Shown here in pieces: positions 16,140-62,313 of a DNA stretch of 64,000 nucleotides. Both the position numbers and the translations under genes were made by a program. Under the pieces are notes generated by a model. The model saw nothing but the letters and a program-made list of their open reading frames with translations, was not told where the DNA came from and did no database searches. Every line of letters begins with the position of its first letter. Position 1 is the stretch's first letter. The stretch covers positions 372,001 to 436,000 of the IMG/VR virus record IMGVR_UViG_3300029922_000001, one strand, 5' to 3'.

Positions 16140-16203
16140 ATCCCCAATAGGAGAATTAGAGGTATACTCTAGACAACACAATCAGGAAAATCTTCAAGAA
16201 AGC

Positions 16204-16232
16204 TTGACAAAAGACTTCAAGATAGGTATAAT
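16204..16232 (+). promoter_or_regulatory. consensus sigma70-type promoter
   Basis: TTGACA-17-TATAAT; no ORF downstream. Confidence 0.85.
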
Positions 16233-16256
16233 GAATGAGTAAGAAAGAAAGCAAGC

Positions 16257-16520
16257 GCCCGATAGCTTGGGTTAACGCAGACTTAACAAGTAGATGTCTA
16301 TATTGATTCACTCATTGCGCAATGAGAAGAATAACGGGACACGCTGAATGGAAAATAGATAACTGAGATTAACACAGTTATTTATAAAGAAGACAGTAGC
16401 ATAAAGAGAAAGCAAGTGAGGCTTAGAGTACGTAATGTTAATCACCCTCTAAGATAATGAGTAAGTAACGTAGTGGTGTTTGGTGAGTTTGATGTGTAGG
16501 TTCGATGCCTACATCGGGCT
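16257..16520 (+). ncRNA. tRNA-shaped RNA with ~190-nt insert in the anticodon arm
   Basis: Acceptor GCCCGAT/ATCGGGC; T-arm GTAGG-TTCGATG-CCTAC; stem AGACTTA/TGAGTTT followed by 5-nt GATGT. Confidence 0.7.
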
Positions 16521-16524
16521 CGCG

Positions 16525-17220
16525 TTAAATATGTCTATTGTAAATATTTTTAATTAAATTGTTTACAATAGACCAATATTCATCTTTATGAGATTGAGTT
16601 AAGTGTTTGCATTTAGATGAATCTATAGTACAAAATTCTATTCCATTTTCATTACATAAAATAGATTTTTGTTTGTCATTATTTTGAATTTTATTCAATT
16701 TATCTTGCCCGTAAATTGGTTCATAATGGAAAATACCATTAAGTTCAATAGCTAATTTCAGTGTTGGAAAATAAAAGTCTAATTCTGAATCAATCGCCTT
16801 ATGTTTATTGTATTCACAATTCAACTCTGGGTAATGTAATTGTATTTGTTCTTCAAGATAAACCTCTAATTTAGATCGTCTATTGCCATGTGTTTTGTTT
16901 TTATTGTTGTAGGTGGTGGCGCAACTATGATTACAGAAAAATCTTCCAGTATTTGATTTTTTTATTGCTCCTAATCTTACTGTTATTTTTTTACTACAAC
17001 ATGAACATTCTTTAGGAACTCTATATTTTATACTTTTTTGTGATGTCATGCACCTTGTAGAACAATAAAGTGGTTGATTTCTTTTAAGAGTTTTATTTAT
17101 TTGAGATTTCTTTCTTATAAAATATAAATTACAAGCATAACAAATTAATTCAATTTGAGGATCACCTTTAAATTGATTTAAATATTCTATTGATATATTA
17201 TTAGATAATGGAGTGTTCAT
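16525..17220 (-). CDS. Vsr/DUF559-like endonuclease with Cys-rich Zn-binding N-terminus (free-standing homing-type)
   Basis: ELDFYFPTLKLAIELNGIFHY; multiple CxxC/CxxxC motifs; the only large minus-strand gene. Confidence 0.75.
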   Translation of the reverse strand: MNTPLSNNISIEYLNQFKGDPQIELICYACNLYFIRKKSQINKTLKRNQPLYCSTRCMTSQKSIKYRVPKECSCCSKKITVRLGAIKKSNTGRFFCNHSCATTYNNKNKTHGNRRSKLEVYLEEQIQLHYPELNCEYNKHKAIDSELDFYFPTLKLAIELNGIFHYEPIYGQDKLNKIQNNDKQKSILCNENGIEFCTIDSSKCKHLTQSHKDEYWSIVNNLIKNIYNRHI

Positions 17221-17263
17221 AAATCTATCTTCTTAAAATAATCGAAGATTCCTTTTCGATTCC

Positions 17264-17292
17264 TTGACAGAGTATGAAAAACGAGGTATAAT
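17264..17292 (+). promoter_or_regulatory. consensus sigma70-type promoter
   Basis: TTGACA-17-TATAAT, driving the non-coding block up to 17913. Confidence 0.85.
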
Positions 17293-17483
17293 ACATCCAT
17301 AAGCCAACGAGATAAATATGGTCAAGTTCCGAAATGGGAACCGGAAAGGCTAATTGCATTACCTTCATCGGGTACGAGACGGATATATATACTACGTTGA
17401 TGGTAGGATGAAATTTATTTCATGAATTAGGCTGAACTCCTAATGTATATAATAGGAAAGCTGAAATAATCTTTCCTGCGCAC

Positions 17484-17582
17484 GAGAAAGAAAGCTATAA
17501 GTGGTACATAGAAAGCGCAGAAGTTTCTCTTTAAATTCAATAGAAAAAGAAGAGTGTATAGGTTCGATTCCTATCTTTCTCA
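17484..17582 (+). ncRNA. degenerate tRNA-like element
   Basis: Acceptor GAGAAAG/CTTTCTC; D-arm CTAT-AAGTGGTAC-ATAG; T-arm ATAGG-TTCGATT-CCTAT; no 7-nt anticodon loop. Confidence 0.6.
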
Positions 17583-17591
17583 CGAGAAAAT

Positions 17592-17680
17592 GGGCGTTTG
17601 CCGAAGTTGGTTAACGGCAGTTCCACTATGACATAAAGTTGTAGTGGAGCTGATCAGGGGTTCGAGTCCTCTAGCGCCCA
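17592..17680 (+). ncRNA. tRNA-like RNA with 13-bp extended anticodon stem and 5-nt loop
   Basis: GGGCGTT/AGCGCCC; D-loop AAGTTGGTTAA; GTTCCACTATGAC-ATAAA-GTTGTAGTGGAGC; T-arm AGGGG-TTCGAGT-CCTCT. Confidence 0.75.
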
Positions 17681-41311: not shown

Positions 41312-41603
41312 AGCTTTTTATTGAGAACCATCTACTCTATTAGTGTATAGATAAAAGGTTTCCCCGAAAATGGGGAAACCTCCGAAATCCCAGCATTGAT
41401 AAGTCAATTACTCACAGCTAAAGCAGTGGGCTTGTTTTTGGTCGTGATAGGGGTTGCAGTCAGCACCATGACAATATTAGTATTGGGTTGGGTTGTAGGC
41501 ATTGGGGTATTATTATTATTGTTTGCTATGGTTAACTGGTTTGTCAACATCTGTTGTCCACGTAAAATCCCCAATAGGTGAATTGAGGGTATACTAGAAA
41601 CTT

Positions 41604-41676
41604 GTCCCGGTAGCTCAGTGGATAGAGCAACAGCCTTCTAAGCTGTGGGTCGCAGGTTCGAATCCTGTTCGGGACG
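41604..41676 (+). tRNA. trnR: tRNA-Arg(UCU)
   Basis: Complete cloverleaf GTCCCGG...ACAGC-CTTCTAA-GCTGT...GCAGG-TTCGAAT-CCTGT-TCGGGAC-G; CCA not encoded. Confidence 0.95.
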
Positions 41677-41700
41677 CGAGATTTATGGTATAATAACATC

Positions 41701-58275: not shown

Positions 58276-58686
58276 ATGTCAAGGTTAATTGAACGAATAG
58301 AGTGGATTTCCATCGAAGATATTACCGAAAATGGTTGGGGTAGTGTTGATAGTAAAGAAATTGATATTGATTTTCAAAGATACATTATGCTTAACGAAAG
58401 AGAATGGAAACAACTTCTTGACTTGAAGCGGGAAGATAAAAAGTACCCCAAACTTCTAGCTAGTGTTAAGGCAAATGGCTTATTAGTGCCAGGTAATTAC
58501 ATTATCCACGAGGGAATGTATTTTCACGGCAATGGTCATCACCGCCTAGCGGCGGCAATTGATTTAGGTTTCAAAAGACTACCTTATATTCAAGTACCAG
58601 GACCTAGACAACTTGCATGGCATTGGAGTAAGAAGATGTTTGAAAAAGCAAATTTAATGGAATATGCTCATGGATTTCCCCAATGA
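58276..58686 (+). CDS. ParB/Srx-like paralog C
   Basis: WISIEDI...NGHHRLAAAIDLGFKRLP. Confidence 0.75.
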   Translation: MSRLIERIEWISIEDITENGWGSVDSKEIDIDFQRYIMLNEREWKQLLDLKREDKKYPKLLASVKANGLLVPGNYIIHEGMYFHGNGHHRLAAAIDLGFKRLPYIQVPGPRQLAWHWSKKMFEKANLMEYAHGFPQ

Positions 58687-58713
58687 GAAAATCGAAGGTA
58701 TACTTAACACAAC

Positions 58714-58977
58714 ATGAAGAACATGACGAATTTTAAGAACATTCTCGCCACTGCCAACTCTTTCACCGCGAAGCGATCTCGTGGTAATGCCGCTCTCAAG
58801 GGACTTCTCGCTTTGGTAGTCATTGCGGTAGTTATTTTCCTGTGCTACATTGGTCCGATTTGGACAATCGGCGCTCTCAACCTCCTGTTTGGACTCCATA
58901 TTGCGGTAACGCTTCAGACTTGGCTTGCTACCTTATGGCTTATGATTGTAGTCGCCGCTAAGAACTACAGCAAGTAA
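58714..58977 (+). CDS. membrane protein
   Basis: TM segments; visibly higher GC; followed by a terminator. Confidence 0.7.
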   Translation: MKNMTNFKNILATANSFTAKRSRGNAALKGLLALVVIAVVIFLCYIGPIWTIGALNLLFGLHIAVTLQTWLATLWLMIVVAAKNYSK

Positions 58978-58995
58978 ATCACCTTTGACAAAATC

Positions 58996-59028
58996 GAAAG
59001 GGTACCCGATGGTACCCTTTCTCTATTT
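58996..59028 (+). terminator. intrinsic terminator
   Basis: GAAAGGGTACC-CGAT-GGTACCCTTTC. Confidence 0.8.
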
Positions 59029-59063
59029 GTCCCCAATAAAAGAATTAGAGGTATATTTAGATC

Positions 59064-59519
59064 ATGCTTGAATCGAAGATTAAATGGAGAGATGCATTTG
59101 GTAACGAAGGTTATCATAGAGATGTAAAAGTTGCATACGTTCATCAACATGGCAACTTCACCGCTTTTGTGTATCCTACTGGAAAACCTTCTTATGCATC
59201 ACCACTAGATCAAATTAAGTCCTCTGTCAGAAATATTGAAGAAGGAAAATTGTGGTGTGAACAAAATTTTGACATTGATGTTTTCGAAAAAGCAAACTTA
59301 ATACCTTTGTGTTTTTCAGAAACCCATAGAGCTATTATGGTGGAAAAAAGAGAAGTCTATATTCCTACATTTGGGATAGTTTGGATTAACGAAAATCGAA
59401 CAGATCAGATTGTGGAAATTACAAAAACTTCGAATTTACTCACTCTAGAACAATATCAAGAACGATATCCAGATACAATATTATTGGGTTATGGTCGTCG
59501 GATTTATAATCCCCAATAG
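59064..59519 (+). CDS. hypothetical protein
   Basis: Leaderless; ends YNPQ*. Confidence 0.75.
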   Translation: MLESKIKWRDAFGNEGYHRDVKVAYVHQHGNFTAFVYPTGKPSYASPLDQIKSSVRNIEEGKLWCEQNFDIDVFEKANLIPLCFSETHRAIMVEKREVYIPTFGIVWINENRTDQIVEITKTSNLLTLEQYQERYPDTILLGYGRRIYNPQ

Positions 59520-59543
59520 AAAAATTTGAGGTATACTAGCATC

Positions 59544-59918
59544 ATGAACGTAATTCACACTTATCGACAGAACCTTAAAGAGATTGCCACAGAAGGTGAA
59601 ATTCTCATTAGCCTTTGGCGAATGGCTCACCGATCTGACTACATTCCGCGATTTGGTATCGAACACTATAAGCTAACCATTACAGAAATTTGGGTACAGC
59701 TTGATGTTCTCTATCGAACTTATGGTATCAATTATAATCCTGATATTCGATTCCGATATCTGGAAGATTATTACTTTCATGAAATTGATGCAATGAATTT
59801 TGAGTTCTCAGTTTCTTATGATCCAGATGACGAACTCAGTAAGATAAAGTGTGTGACTACTGCACTTTTATCACAGCTATATGGTAAGCCTTGTTATTTC
59901 TTGATCCCACAAGAGTAA
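59544..59918 (+). CDS. hypothetical protein
   Basis: Leaderless behind class-B promoter. Confidence 0.75.
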   Translation: MNVIHTYRQNLKEIATEGEILISLWRMAHRSDYIPRFGIEHYKLTITEIWVQLDVLYRTYGINYNPDIRFRYLEDYYFHEIDAMNFEFSVSYDPDDELSKIKCVTTALLSQLYGKPCYFLIPQE

Positions 59919-59924
59919 AAGAGT

Positions 59925-59951
59925 AACCGGAGAGAATCCGGTTTTCTTTTT
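59925..59951 (+). terminator. intrinsic terminator
   Basis: AACCGG-AGAGAAT-CCGGTT plus T tract. Confidence 0.75.
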
Positions 59952-60066
59952 GCTTCCACGATTCATAATTCCTATATATTAGTGTATAGATGCATAGGAA
60001 TTATGAAAATGGGGAAATAATGATCAGTAAAAATCCCCAATGATCAAAAATGAGGTATACTAAGAT

Positions 60067-60468
60067 CGTACAAGACGGTAAGGTGGCTGAAAGGAAATCC
60101 CCAAAAGTCTATAAACTAATTTAGAATTGAATACATATAGTAACTTTCAGGGTGTGCGGTGACGGGTTAAAATCGTACACACCTTTCAATGTACACGATA
60201 AATCTTTGTGGCTCAACGAATAAGATGCAGTGAGAGTTTTATCCCGTTTTAGAATCTACCCTAGTGAATAAGGTCAAAATCCCCAATGAGATGGCAAATC
60301 TCCCAGATAAGGTAATCCATGTATATCCATGATATGATCGTTGACCACGTATCGTCTAAATGTGTAAAGAACTGATGAAGATCCTTTAGCCCATTTATGG
60401 GTTATAAATAGAAAGGTAATGAGGGTTGTTGTGCGGCTTAAATCGTATAGTCAGCCCTTTAACTTTTT
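60067..60468 (+). ncRNA. candidate ~400-nt structured non-coding RNA
   Basis: Class-B promoter with no ORF behind it; several hairpins; 5'/3' complementarity; terminator-like 3' hairpin 60421-60468. Confidence 0.65.
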
Positions 60469-60503
60469 ATCCCCAATAAAAGAATTACAGGTATACTCCA
60501 ATT

Positions 60504-60692
60504 ATGAGATTCAAGACAACAGTTAGCAAGTTTGAGAATGGTGAATGGACTATCATTGAGGGTTCAGTTTATCGTAATTGGTCAAAGCAACCAACTGAGA
60601 AAATGATCAGCAATGCAATTGCCAGTATCTTGAAAGACCTACAGACTATCATTCCTGGTTTTAGGGAATATGGAGTGGAGAAGATCATTTAA
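60504..60692 (+). CDS. hypothetical protein
   Basis: Leaderless behind class-B promoter. Confidence 0.7.
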   Translation: MRFKTTVSKFENGEWTIIEGSVYRNWSKQPTEKMISNAIASILKDLQTIIPGFREYGVEKII

Positions 60693-60920
60693 GAATCCCC
60701 AATAGGGGAATTAAGGTATACTCTAAATGTGATGAATAGTTATCATCCAAAAAGATAAGGGTTTAAGTTTATTTTTGCAAAAGCTGTACGTTGGTTAGTA
60801 ACCAATAAAAGAATATTCTAATAACTAAAGAAGAAAGATTGATAGAGTAGCGTCTATTAAAATAAATGTATATCCTTATCACATTTTCCCCAACACTCAA
60901 ATTAGAGGTATACTATATCC

Positions 60921-61169
60921 ATGAAAACATACAATCTTGGAGATTTGGTTATTGTCAAAGGAACAACGAATAATCCATATGTAACTGGTGGAATTTCAGG
61001 ACCTGATAGAGCAAGGGTCATAAACTCTCTAAAAGAGCAAAAGACAGTAAGTGACGATTATGAATTCTGGATTGCTCCTACTAATGGTGGTGCATTTAAA
61101 GTGCAACAGCATCTTATCTCTTTCCAAAATCCAATAGTGTTGCAGATTCATGCTCAAAATCCCCAATAA
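60921..61169 (+). CDS. hypothetical protein
   Basis: Leaderless; ends QNPQ*. Confidence 0.7.
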   Translation: MKTYNLGDLVIVKGTTNNPYVTGGISGPDRARVINSLKEQKTVSDDYEFWIAPTNGGAFKVQQHLISFQNPIVLQIHAQNPQ

Positions 61170-61193
61170 AAGAATTAGAGGTATACTAGAAAC

Positions 61194-61577
61194 ATGGAAA
61201 ACTTTAATCAGAAACTTCAAGACTTTCTCGCTCTAGCTGAAAAGGAAACTCAACACCGAATGCATATGGAAGGTTATGACAGTCTTCTAGCAAGTGCGGA
61301 AAAGGCAGGACGACGGGCATACTATTACTTTACCTGTGAACCAGGATTGAAGTTTGTCAAAGTGTGGAAAGAAGCACAAGGTGACAAGTTTATTCACAGT
61401 TTTGTTGAAAAAAATACTGGAATCATCTATGGCGCGGATAGTTGGAAGAAACCCAATTTTAAGAGAGCATACGGCACTCTAGACACCATTAATGATTGGT
61501 ATTGGGGTGATTATTACGGGGTAAGTAAGACAGGGGTTAATACACTAGTACCAAAAGAAAAGCGTCGTAAGCCTTGA
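61194..61577 (+). CDS. hypothetical phage protein
   Basis: KFVKVW...FIHSFV...TG.IY.A.SWKKP. Confidence 0.75.
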   Translation: MENFNQKLQDFLALAEKETQHRMHMEGYDSLLASAEKAGRRAYYYFTCEPGLKFVKVWKEAQGDKFIHSFVEKNTGIIYGADSWKKPNFKRAYGTLDTINDWYWGDYYGVSKTGVNTLVPKEKRRKP

Positions 61578-61615
61578 TAAATCCCCAATAGGGGGAATTA
61601 AGGTATACTACCGGT

Positions 61616-61846
61616 ATGGAAAACTTCAATACCGGTGGGTCTGTTTCTCTAGCCGCTTTACATCAACGTCAAGCGGCTACTAAGGCTTTATTAGAGTCGT
61701 TGTATGGTGAAGTCTTAGCTAAAAAGGTTCACACTGATCGTAAATATTTAAATTTACTATTACATGTTCTTGATTCTGATGGTAAAGATCTAGAAGCAGT
61801 GGAGAATTTACGTACAATGCTTGAAAAGGATCTGGTATACTACTAA
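61616..61846 (+). CDS. hypothetical protein
   Basis: Leaderless behind class-B promoter. Confidence 0.7.
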   Translation: MENFNTGGSVSLAALHQRQAATKALLESLYGEVLAKKVHTDRKYLNLLLHVLDSDGKDLEAVENLRTMLEKDLVYY

Positions 61847-61995
61847 CATGAGTGACGCAAGAATCGAATAGATTGGTTTAATCTGTGGAACCTTAATTGC
61901 AGCATTGGCTGCTGGCTTTGGATTGAATATCCTTTTAGCTTTGATTTTAGGTCTTTAAAAATACCCAATAAGAAAATCGAAGGTATACTCTATAT

Positions 61996-62313
61996 ATGAA
62001 ACAACATGAACTGTATGATGAACTATGTTTGACTGAAGCATCACAAGCAGAAGGACTTAGCTTTGATGTTGGTTTTCATTCAGATTTAATTGAATTATAT
62101 AGACTTGATGTTAAATCTGAGTTTAGATGGCAAGGACGCGCTACTAGATTCTTAAAGGAATTAACTGCAATTGCTGATAGGAATAATTTACCTATTGAGT
62201 TAGAAGTTGGTTCTGGTACTGATGAAATAGACATAGTAGAGGATCTTCCAGCTTTTTACAATAAGTTTGGTTTCGAGTGGGTGGATACTTATATGCGTAG
62301 AATCCCCCAATAA
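61996..62313 (+). CDS. minimal GNAT-like protein
   Basis: LYRLDVKSEFRWQGRATRFLKEL...AD...LPIEL...FYNKFGF. Confidence 0.7.
   Translation: MKQHELYDELCLTEASQAEGLSFDVGFHSDLIELYRLDVKSEFRWQGRATRFLKELTAIADRNNLPIELEVGSGTDEIDIVEDLPAFYNKFGFEWVDTYMRRIPQ

What the first reader, a model, noticed from the sequence alone, without database searches (positions are those of the whole stretch)
60067..60468. Orphan ~400-nt structured RNA cassette with its own promoter and terminator
Seen: a class-B promoter followed by no ORF in a region where nearly every other promoter has an ATG at +1. The 5' AAGGTGGCTGA (60080-60090) can pair with the 3' TCAGCCCTTT (60451-60460), mutually exclusive with the 60421-60459 terminator-like hairpin. 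Two related stems GTGCG-G...TTAAA(A)T-CGTA lie at 60152-60180 and 60429-60450, with hairpins GAGAT-GGCAA-ATCTC and TAGCCCA-TTTA-TGGGTTA. Two -10-less copies of AAATCCCCAA lie inside (60095, 60277). Inference: a novel ncRNA, possibly a switch or a decoy for the factor that reads CCCCAA. Its 3' CGGCTTA...GTCAG superficially recalls the RNase P RNA 3' end.
Basis: partly seen in the sequence, partly recalled or inferred. Interest (0 to 1): 0.72.

Follow-up and report, generated by a model that had tools for sequence, protein, structure and literature searches.

The report
Conserved abundant noncoding RNA, peat megaphage
A 441-kb phage from peat carries a self-contained gene for a non-coding RNA of about 320-400 nt that matches no known RNA family, is far better conserved than the protein genes beside it, and is the only part of the locus seen in soil and peat metatranscriptomes; it is a real phage RNA under strong selection, and what it does is still unknown.

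Summary
A consensus TCCCCAA-N13-GGTATACT promoter (60034-60061) is followed by about 400 nt closed in all six frames, ending in a strong hairpin (60421-60459) with a U-rich tail. New evidence makes it a real RNA gene. Metatranscriptome contigs from peat, rhizosphere and soil cover only 60068-60381, none of the flanking ORFs, and one starts exactly at the predicted +1 (60068). A related soil phage contig (L028) has the whole cassette. Against 17% divergence at four-fold sites of the flanking genes, the 5' domain (60068-60268) differs by 2.5% and a 3' domain (60363-60426) by 3%. The linker (60269-60362) drifts at 20%. Conservation begins exactly at +1, and the downstream gene differs in L028, so the cassette is autonomous, not a leader. 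Rfam gives no match, including RNase P, 6S, Y RNA, ROOL and GOLLD. The second CCCCAA box is not conserved. Global folding energy is unremarkable and no fold has convincing covariation support (one compensatory pair, contradicted by another variant). Best reading: a new family of stable, trans-acting phage RNA made with the takeover genes; its partner is unknown.

The parts
59925..59952 (+). Intrinsic terminator of the upstream 124-aa ORF (7-bp GC stem plus T-run). It insulates the RNA gene from read-through.
   Evidence: terminator scan. Conserved in L028.
59962..60007 (.). Perfect 14-bp inverted repeat with an 18-nt spacer between the terminator and the promoter. Unique in the genome and not conserved in L028, so probably not essential.
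   Evidence: (z -4.6).
60034..60061 (+). Promoter of the phage's CCCCAA class (TCCCCAA-N13-GGTATACT).
   Evidence: Both boxes are conserved in L028 while the spacer and the 6 nt after TATACT differ.
60068..60068 (+). Transcription start (G), at the position where the A of the leaderless ATG sits in the other cassettes.
   Evidence: A peat metatranscriptome contig (X19) starts exactly here. Conservation with L028 starts exactly here.
60068..60268 (+). 5' conserved domain of the RNA. Differs from L028 at 5 of 201 positions, 4 of them in one hairpin tip.
   Evidence: Covered by RNA contigs from four runs.
60095..60104 (+). Orphan AAATCCCCAA box 1, with no -10 element. Conserved in all variants seen.
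60104..60147 (+). Predicted hairpin with a variable tip. The base of the stem is kept (U-A to U.G in two variants). Indels and substitutions are confined to 60120-60141.
   Evidence: It is thermodynamically weak.
60149..60184 (+). Core hairpin (12 bp with one bulged base, 11-nt loop) inside an 85-nt stretch that is invariant in every variant.
   Evidence: (-14.9 kcal/mol, z -3.3).
60269..60362 (+). Freely evolving linker: 20% divergence from L028, replaced beyond alignment in run X22, length kept within about 5 nt. It holds orphan box 2 (60277-60286, not conserved) and the small hairpin 60288-60302 (stem kept, loop varies).
60363..60426 (+). 3' conserved domain (2 of 64 positions differ), including hairpin 60387-60404 whose only change is in the loop. 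RNA contigs end within it, at about 60373-60385.
60421..60468 (+). Terminator-like hairpin (16 bp, one bulge) with a U-rich tail. The 3' strand is invariant. The 5' strand carries 5 changes in L028, 4 of which turn G.U or U.G into A-U or C-G.
   Evidence: (-24.4 kcal/mol, z -5.7).
60470..60497 (+). Promoter of the next cassette (the leaderless 62-aa ORF 60504-60692). It marks the end of the RNA gene.

Best explanation
This is an autonomous phage gene for a stable non-coding RNA of a new family.

Shown:
- It has a strong promoter of the phage's CCCCAA class.
- RNA contigs begin at G60068.
- Nothing in it is translatable.
- The RNA is detected in many peat and soil metatranscriptomes, while the neighbouring leaderless mRNAs, driven by near-identical promoters, are not.
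- It has two sequence-constrained domains (60068-60268 and 60363-60426), joined by a linker of about 94 nt that drifts at the neutral rate.
- It ends in a hairpin whose stem is maintained by wobble-to-Watson-Crick changes.

Inferred:
- The primary transcript ends at the 60421-60468 terminator, and the abundant species is trimmed to about 60381.
- The RNA acts in trans, as RNA, during the phase in which the roughly 90 small takeover genes of the same promoter class are expressed.
- It most likely works by occupying a conserved partner: a host machine such as RNA polymerase, the ribosome or an RNase, or a phage protein such as the phage's own Ro60. In that case it would be a decoy or scaffold rather than an antisense regulator.
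- The partner is not identified.
For: Promoter and lack of an ORF.

Expression:
- All sampled words held by RNA runs fall inside the cassette: 0.09 of 177 words for the 1701-nt stretch equals 0.42 of 38 words for the cassette alone.
- 11 runs labelled RNA, plus one run of unknown kind, from about 10 studies in total (peat, permafrost, soil, rhizosphere, wetland) hold it.
- Contigs from four runs lie only on 60068-60381, with zero depth over 58500-60020 and 60489-62000. One contig begins at 60068.

Non-coding drift: 1-nt indels in the natural variants.

Selection, window against L028:
- 5' domain 5/201 differences.
- 3' domain 2/64.
- Four-fold sites of four flanking ORFs 23/135 (P = 1e-10 for the 5' domain).
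- First and second codon positions of three of the four flanking ORFs 5-6% (10-13% in the 62-aa ORF).
- Linker 19/94.
- The 6 nt before +1 differ at 5 positions and the 52 nt after it at none.

Autonomy:
- In L028 the genes downstream are different.
- An upstream terminator is conserved.

Terminator hairpin.

Not cellular: core 22-mers are absent from 185,579 species genomes.
Against: - No convincing covariation supports any fold. The conserved domains do not vary, so they cannot be tested.
- Natural variants break six pairs of the MFE model of the 3' half, and L028 abolishes the predicted 5'/3' closing helix 60073-80/60350-57.
- The folding energy of 60068-60385 equals that of shuffles.
- Logan contigs carry no strand and only crude depth. 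The + strand and the 3' end near 60381 are therefore inferred from the promoter and from where contigs end. The 'higher abundance than the mRNAs' rests on presence or absence, not on counts.
- Only two DNA lineages and three or four partial RNA variants are known.
- High sequence conservation without a strong structure would also fit a DNA-level element.
- The trans-acting decoy or scaffold mechanism has no direct evidence.
Confidence: 0.7

Rival explanations
1. It is a DNA-level element, such as a replication origin activated by transcription, a packaging site or an array of regulator-binding sites. The RNA would be a by-product.
For: - Near-total sequence invariance without covariation and with ordinary folding energy.
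- Pieces derived from promoters are repeated inside: a 16/17 copy of the -35 region, a 14/16 copy of a -10/start region, and three copies of TAA(G/A)ATCGTA.
- Orphan CCCCAA boxes are enriched.
- T4 origins are middle promoters without a dedicated ORF (my own knowledge).
Against: - Conservation starts exactly at the RNA's first base, while the 6 bp before it are free to vary.
- A discrete RNA accumulates in many metatranscriptomes while the neighbouring mRNAs do not.
- Box 2 is not conserved.
- GC skew shows no switch here.
- The terminator stem is kept by pair-preserving changes, which is an RNA-level signal.
Confidence: 0.1
2. It is the Y-RNA-like partner of the phage's own Ro60 protein. It would tether Ro60 to a host exonuclease for RNA turnover.
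For: - The phage encodes a full Ro60 (TROVE plus Ro60 vWA; G000:14878-16542).
- Phage Ro60 proteins bind phage Y-like RNAs and host PNPase (PMC12135203).
- The invariant core holds a CGAA (60217-60220).
- Y RNAs are stable and abundant.
Against: - No hit to the Y_RNA or YrlA models.
- It is 320-400 nt against 80-130 nt for Y RNAs.
- It lies about 24 kb (across the contig ends) from the Ro60 gene, while reported bacterial and phage Y RNAs lie within 4 kb on the same strand (PMC4201824).
- The motif GNCGAAN0-1G is not met.
- The UUGACC strand that could have formed a Ro-type helix reads GUGAUG in L028.
- A better placed candidate, a 376-nt ORF-free stretch with its own promoter and terminator, lies directly upstream of the Ro60 gene.
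Confidence: 0.07
3. It is a cis-acting leader or attenuator. Pairing of 60080-90 with 60451-60 would prevent the terminator from forming and let transcription run into the downstream genes.
For: - The two pairings are mutually exclusive, and the duplex is -14.2 kcal/mol.
- The terminator's 3' strand is invariant while its 5' strand drifts, as if the 3' strand had a second partner.
Against: - The duplex is no better than shuffles (42/300).
- The downstream ORF has its own consensus promoter and a leaderless start.
- In L028 the cassette is followed by other genes.
- RNA contigs are discrete and stop near 60381.
- A 370-nt sensor for a 62-aa ORF that has its own promoter makes little sense.
Confidence: 0.06
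4. It is a divergent member of a known RNA family: RNase P RNA, 6S RNA, tmRNA, ROOL, GOLLD or a self-cleaving ribozyme.
For: - Short words recall RNase P RNA (GGAAAUCC, AGGGUG.GCGGU, AAGGUCAAAAU, CGGCUUA; from memory, a lead only).
- CUGAUGA at 60372-78 recalls hammerhead and C-box motifs.
- The phage invests in translation RNAs: 24 tRNAs and a tmRNA.
Against: - No Rfam 15 family reaches E <= 10 on the cassette.
- RF00010 finds nothing in the whole phage, while it is found in 11 of 14 control genomes.
- The P4 and P5 equivalents cannot pair (by eye).
- CUGAUGA reads CUGAUAA in L028.
- ARAGORN finds the phage's tmRNA elsewhere.
Confidence: 0.04
5. It is non-functional: the decayed remains of duplicated promoter and ORF units, still transcribed because one promoter survives.
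For: Internal copies of promoter pieces and an internal duplication. No excess folding stability overall.
Against: The 5' domain is about seven times better conserved than four-fold sites of the neighbours, and better than their first and second codon positions. The same pattern of conserved, variable and conserved segments recurs in the RNA variants from other biomes.
Confidence: 0.03

Closest known systems
6S RNA (bacterial; RNA polymerase decoy)
   Same: A stable, abundant, untranslated RNA with its own promoter and end that acts in trans on a core machine. A promoter-related sequence box lies inside the RNA.
   Different: No match to the 6S models. The length is 320-400 nt against about 185 nt. 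The predicted fold is branched, not a rod with a central bubble. Conservation here lies in the sequence, whereas 6S conserves shape. Binding to RNA polymerase is untested.
Y RNAs with Ro60, including the phage Yrl1 and Yrl2 of Thermus phage phiLo (PMC12135203, PMC4201824)
   Same: A phage that encodes Ro60. The RNA is stable and non-coding and has its own transcription unit.
   Different: Its size, its distance from the Ro60 gene, the missing GNCGAA motif and the missing tRNA-like module all fail. No model matches.
phi29 pRNA (packaging RNA)
   Same: A phage RNA made from an early promoter starting at +1. It has two domains joined by a dispensable linker, with a larger 5' domain, and it is abundant.
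   Different: There is no Rfam match to Phage_pRNA. pRNA is confined to small phi29-like phages that package with a terminal protein. This phage has a terminase. pRNA conserves structure rather than sequence.
GOLLD and ROOL (large phage- or prophage-associated RNAs of unknown function)
   Same: Large untranslated RNAs carried by phages, often near tRNAs, and highly expressed. Their function is unknown.
   Different: No model matches. This RNA is smaller (GOLLD about 800 nt, ROOL about 580 nt). Those families are defined by rich covariation, which is not available here.
T4 stable RNAs C and D (species 1 and 2)
   Same: Small stable phage RNAs of unknown function, made alongside phage tRNAs.
   Different: The T4 RNAs are 120-140 nt and are cut out of the tRNA cluster transcript. 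This RNA is a separate unit with its own promoter.

Membership tests
RNase P RNA (bacterial types A and B, archaeal) | Match to the family covariance model (conserved P1-P4 core with the universal nucleotides) | tested here: not met
   No RNase P family at E <= 10 on 59900-60950 or on 60062-60472. RF00010 finds nothing in the whole phage but is found in 11 of 14 control genomes.
RNase P RNA (bacterial types A and B, archaeal) | P4 helix between the 5' GGAAAGUCC-type strand and the 3' GGCUUA-type strand, closed by P1 | tested here: not met
   By eye, AAAUCCCC against GCGGCUU leaves two mismatches in 8 bp. The CCCC that would form P5 faces another CCCC. RNA contigs end about 70 nt before the supposed 3' strands.
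6S RNA | Covariance-model match; a rod of about 185 nt with a large central bubble | tested here: not met
   No hit. The MFE and centroid structures are multibranched.
6S RNA | Binds the RNA polymerase holoenzyme and templates pRNA synthesis | not testable with these tools
   Needs biochemistry.
Y RNA / YrlA | Covariance-model match; 80-130 nt; a 5'/3' stem with the GNCGAAN0-1G motif; a tRNA-like module | tested here: not met
   No hit. The length is 320-400 nt. Only AACGAAU is present at 60215-21. ARAGORN finds no tRNA-like element here. Criteria are taken from PMC4201824.
Y RNA / YrlA | Encoded within about 4 kb of the Ro60 gene on the same strand | tested here: not met
   Ro60 lies at G000:14878-16542. 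The cassette lies at G000:432068-432468, about 24 kb away across the contig ends.
Self-cleaving ribozymes (hammerhead and others) | Covariance-model match; conserved CUGAUGA core | tested here: not met
   No hit. CUGAUGA (60372-78) reads CUGAUAA in L028.
ROOL, GOLLD, OLE, raiA and other large bacterial or phage ncRNAs in Rfam 15 | Covariance-model match | tested here: not met
Riboswitch or attenuator leader | Controls the gene directly downstream, with which it is co-inherited | tested here: not met
   The downstream ORF has its own promoter and a leaderless start. The downstream genes differ in L028.
Independent ncRNA gene (generic) | Own promoter, defined start, no ORF, terminator, transcript detected, purifying selection | tested here: met
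   The strand and the exact 3' end are inferred, not measured.
Structured RNA (generic) | Compensatory base changes, or folding energy beyond shuffles | tested here: inconclusive
   - Local z-scores are -2.6 (60086-60190), -3.3 (core hairpin) and -5.7 (terminator). The global z-score is 0.05.
- There is one compensatory pair, 60319/60330 A-U to G-C in L028, contradicted by A.G in X24.
- Four wobble-to-Watson-Crick changes occur in the terminator stem.
- The conserved domains do not vary.

The most novel reading that the evidence does not exclude
This is a previously unknown class of phage RNA whose 200-nt, almost invariant 5' domain engages a universally conserved host machine: the ribosome, RNA polymerase or an RNA-decay or RNA-repair complex. 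Alternatively it is itself catalytic. It would be a key takeover factor of a lineage of soil megaphages that express nearly all their genes as leaderless mRNAs. It is abundant enough to be picked up in bulk soil, peat and permafrost metatranscriptomes from several biomes.
Probability: 0.25. Interest if true: 0.85.

Novelty: new variant of a known kind. Interest (0 to 1): 0.62.

Why it matters
Very few phage-encoded non-coding RNAs other than tRNAs have a known role, and almost nothing is known for jumbo and megaphages; a 2026 review only notes that phiKZ expresses some (PMC13282480).

- Here an uncultivated 441-kb phage devotes one of its strongest promoter slots to an RNA that selection holds almost invariant.
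- That RNA is the only product of the locus visible in environmental RNA from peat, permafrost, soil, rhizosphere and wetland.
- This makes it a concrete, synthesisable handle on how such phages take over their hosts. It can be tested by pull-down, structure probing and binding assays.
- It is also a sequence marker for the activity of this phage lineage in soil metatranscriptomes.

Tried and rejected
Known families and motifs:
- Rfam at gathering and at E <= 10: nothing. RF00010 on the whole genome: nothing. ARAGORN: nothing in the cassette.
- No reverse transcriptase and no rnpA gene in the phage.
- The Y-RNA-type helix (GGUCAA/UUGACC, or GG-C-UCAACGA/UCGUUGACC) is not kept in L028 or X24.
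- The hammerhead, C-box or k-turn reading of CUGAUGA is not conserved.
- The MFE closing helix 60073-80/60350-57 and the helix 60221-27/60245-51 are contradicted by natural variants.
- A 9-nt identity and an 8-nt complementarity to the 16S rRNA 1400 region (recalled from memory) are at the level expected by chance for these lengths, and I dropped them.
- The idea that UAAGGU repeats act as an anti-Shine-Dalgarno sponge is not significant. Shine-Dalgarno sites are rare in this phage anyway (AGGAG upstream of 7% of ORFs).

Coding:
- Six frames, and TAG read through because the phage has two CUA-anticodon tRNAs: still closed.
- A pseudo-protein search with the longest open frame found nothing.

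Paralogues and other targets in the phage:
- No paralogue and no significant antisense target in the phage genome.
- The second ORF-less cassette (60723-60886) is not related to this one (z 0.7).

Homologue hunts that failed:
- Core 22-23-mers in IMG/VR.
- Core 22-mers in 185,579 species genomes.
- JGI metagenome contigs: only the source contig.
- The promoter pattern in IMG/VR, and TerL in IMG/VR.
- INPHARED phages by blastn.
- The flanking 62-aa and 124-aa proteins. Ten contigs carrying the 124-aa protein all hold an identical cassette.
- The covariance model R1 of the 5' domain against more distant relatives that share the promoter type (L030-L037): best E 0.11.
- More contigs of the L028 lineage are identical to L028.

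Other:
- Pfam on nine neighbouring proteins gave nothing that points to RNA binding.
- GC skew shows no origin signal here.

Full report
CONTEXT

The window is bases 372001-436000 of a single 441,498-bp virus contig with 33.9% G+C. Its DNA is found in peat metagenomes.

The phage encodes:
- DNA polymerase III alpha, an intein-bearing ribonucleotide reductase, a terminase and a Mu-type portal;
- 24 tRNAs, two of them with a CUA anticodon, and a tmRNA;
- a complete Ro60 protein;
- two sigma-like proteins.

The last 100 kb carries 92 copies of a very uniform two-box promoter, CCCCAA-N13-GGTATACT, all on the + strand.
- In 70 of them an ATG lies exactly 6 nt after TATACT, and in 10 more within 4-9 nt. 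These units therefore give leaderless mRNAs for small ORFs.
- Of the rest, three have Shine-Dalgarno-led ORFs, one starts with GTG, and one drives tRNA-Arg.
- Only two cassettes have no ORF at all: the one under study and a 164-nt one two genes further on (60723-60886).

THE OBSERVATION

- The promoter 60034-60061 is a full consensus copy.
- The following 400 nt are closed in all six frames: the longest stop-to-stop frame is 58 aa, on the minus strand. Reading TAG through does not open a frame.
- The cassette is bracketed by a canonical terminator behind the upstream ORF (59925-59952) and by its own strong hairpin 60421-60459 with a U-rich tail (-24.4 kcal/mol, z -5.7).
- The two 'related stems' are real and unique in the genome. 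They belong to a roughly 70-nt internal duplication.
- The two orphan AAATCCCCAA boxes are two of only about seven such orphans in 100 kb. The second is a 16/17 copy of the cassette's own -35 region.

IT IS TRANSCRIBED AS A DISCRETE RNA

- Eleven runs labelled RNA, plus one run of unknown kind, from about ten studies in total hold 31-mers of the cassette. The biomes are peat, permafrost, soil, rhizosphere and wetland.
- For the 1701-nt stretch that includes both flanking ORFs, the same runs hold the same absolute number of words (0.09 x 177 against 0.42 x 38). Every word they hold therefore lies inside the cassette.
- I laid the contigs of four RNA runs on 58500-62000. Depth is zero everywhere except 60021-60488. 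The pieces span 60068-60268 (running on about 39 nt further), 60082-60268 (running on about 110 nt further), 60133-60381 and 60089-60373.
- One contig begins exactly at 60068. That is the base where the A of the ATG sits in the other cassettes, and so the predicted +1.
- Three contigs end within 60373-60385.
- DNA contamination would have covered the flanks, and it did not.
- Caveats: these are assembled contigs without strand information and with only crude depth. The + strand is inferred from the promoter and from the coincidence at 60068. The 3' end near 60381 is inferred from where contigs stop.

IT IS UNDER STRONG SELECTION, AS RNA

A neighbouring DUF7717 protein has a 90% identical homologue on a 7.6-kb soil contig, L028. 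This contig has the 124-aa ORF, the terminator, the promoter and a full-length copy of the cassette.

Divergence between the two lineages:

| Region | Differences |
|---|---|
| Four flanking ORFs, nucleotide level | 8-22% |
| Their four-fold degenerate sites | 17% (23/135) |
| First and second codon positions (three of the four ORFs) | 5-6% |
| First and second codon positions (the 62-aa ORF) | 10-13% |
| RNA 60068-60268 | 5 of 201 (2.5%; P = 1e-10 against the four-fold rate); four of the five in the tip of one hairpin |
| RNA 60363-60426 | 2 of 64 |
| Linker 60269-60362 | 19 of 94 (20%) |
| Terminator region 60427-60468 | 9 of 42 |

- The 6 nt between TATACT and +1 differ at five positions, and the next 52 nt at none. 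Constraint therefore begins with the first transcribed base.
- The RNA variants from other biomes show the same pattern. 60142-60226 is invariant in all of them. In run X22 the linker is replaced beyond alignment while 60133-60268 and 60360-60381 stay 98% alike. One-base indels occur throughout the variable parts, which no ORF could tolerate.
- In the terminator stem, four of five changes in L028 turn G.U or U.G into A-U or C-G, while the 3' strand is invariant.
- The genes behind the cassette differ between the two phages. L028 has a 47-aa and a 164-aa ORF there, and it lacks the second ORF-less cassette. The RNA gene is therefore a self-contained module and not the leader of a particular gene.

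WHAT IT IS NOT

- Rfam 15 gives nothing at E <= 10 on either strand.
- The RNase P model finds nothing in the whole phage, and there is no rnpA gene.
- The words that recall RNase P RNA cannot form P4 or P5, and the RNA contigs stop before the supposed 3' strands.
- CUGAUGA is not conserved.
- Y-RNA criteria fail on size, motif, model and distance from the Ro60 gene. A better placed Y-RNA candidate lies right upstream of that gene.
- There is no reverse transcriptase in the phage.
- Core 22-mers are absent from 185,579 bacterial and archaeal species genomes and from IMG/VR. The RNA is therefore not a captured cellular RNA of any sequenced lineage.

STRUCTURE

Evidence for a defined fold is limited.
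- The 318-nt abundant species folds no better than shuffles (z 0.05).
- The subdomain 60086-60190 (z -2.6), the core hairpin 60149-60184 (z -3.3), the hairpin 60387-60404 (z -2.8) and the terminator hairpin (z -5.7) do stand out.
- Natural variation fits the hairpin 60104-60147 (stem kept, tip free to vary), the small hairpins 60288-60302 and 60387-60404 (changes only in the loops) and the terminator.
- It gives one compensatory pair (60319/60330), which X24 contradicts.
- It contradicts the MFE helices 60221-27/60245-51, 60213-19/60338-44 and the 5'/3' closing helix 60073-80/60350-57.
- The conserved domains are too invariant to test.

MECHANISM

Shown:
- a promoter, a start at 60068 and the absence of any ORF;
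- the RNA is detected where the neighbouring mRNAs from equally good promoters are not;
- two constrained domains joined by a neutral linker of conserved length;
- a maintained terminator stem;
- independence from the downstream gene.

Inferred: the RNA acts in trans during the phase in which the takeover genes are expressed.

Such dense sequence constraint, tighter than on protein-coding positions, is what one sees in RNAs that make extensive contacts with a conserved machine. I therefore favour a decoy or scaffold that occupies a host complex (RNA polymerase, ribosome or RNase), at roughly 35% of my belief.

My remaining belief is spread as follows:
- an RNP with a phage protein such as Ro60: about 10%;
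- a base-pairing regulator: about 10%;
- a ribozyme: about 5-10%;
- DNA-level or cis roles: about 15% together;
- a known family or no function: under 10% together.

Box 2 is changed in L028 and in the contigs from X19, X21 and X24.

VERDICT

This is a real, expressed, strongly conserved phage ncRNA gene of a new family. The switch and RNase P readings are not. The function is open but testable.

Noticed in passing
window 1-64000, and the genome from 340 kb to its end: The phage uses leaderless mRNAs throughout. In 70 of 92 CCCCAA-class promoters the ATG lies exactly 6 nt after TATACT. Many ORFs end in ...NPQ* because the next -35 box AATCCCCAATAG is read as Asn-Pro-Gln-stop. In the rest of the genome a (T)GTATAAT box 6-8 nt before the ATG is the most enriched upstream motif (23-29% of ORFs), while AGGAG occurs before only 7%.
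   Followed up: partly
window 60723-60886: A second ORF-less cassette lies behind a CCCCAA promoter (60696-60722). It is 164 nt, closed by a GATAAGGG../..CCTTATC stem, with z -2.85. It is unrelated in sequence to the first cassette, absent from the relative L028, and not seen in the four RNA runs laid.
   Followed up: partly
window 41568-41677: tRNA-Arg(TCT) is driven directly by a CCCCAA-class promoter. The predicted start lies only 2 nt before the mature 5' end.
   Followed up: no
window 16142-17590: A CCCCAA promoter with no ORF behind it is followed within 40 nt by a textbook sigma-70 promoter (TTGACA-N17-TATAAT). About 1.4 kb without a + strand ORF then leads up to tRNA-Ser(ACT) at 17592. 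A 231-aa ORF lies on the opposite strand.
   Followed up: no
G000:C1:14878-16542 and the 376 nt upstream (L025:9502-9877): The phage encodes a full Ro60 (TROVE plus Ro60 vWA). Directly upstream is an ORF-free stretch with a sigma-70-like promoter, a CGAA motif and a strong terminator. This is a candidate phage Y RNA that Rfam does not recognise.
   Followed up: partly
G000:C1:172128-172200 and 353602-353673; tmRNA at 293574-293927: There are two tRNAs with a CUA anticodon (amber suppressors) and a phage tmRNA (tag GKSYAYVG). TAG is still used as a stop in 9 of 86 leaderless ORFs, so any recoding would be partial or confined to a particular phase.
   Followed up: partly
G000:C1:257308-258891: A 527-aa protein with WGR, PARP-regulatory and PARP-catalytic domains. 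This is a eukaryote-like poly(ADP-ribose) polymerase architecture in a phage.
   Followed up: no
end of the contig (G000:C1:441471-441498): The contig ends with a complete CCCCAA promoter at its very last base, so the record is cut inside a cassette or is circularly permuted. The 124-aa neighbour protein is also recorded on a contig of 521,591 bp, so a longer assembly of this or a near-identical phage exists.
   Followed up: no
window 59962-60007: A perfect 14-bp inverted repeat lies between the upstream terminator and the RNA promoter. It is unique in the genome and is one of about ten such palindromes in the 100-kb region. It is not conserved in L028.
   Followed up: yes
L030-L037 (peat and soil contigs of 15-69 kb): More distant relatives share the same CCCCAA-N13-GGTATACT promoter type and the same arrays of small leaderless ORFs. 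They have their own ORF-free gaps (for example L030:13250-13676 and 17106-17637, and L032:3059-3465) that may hold other RNA genes. None matches the covariance model of this RNA.
   Followed up: partly
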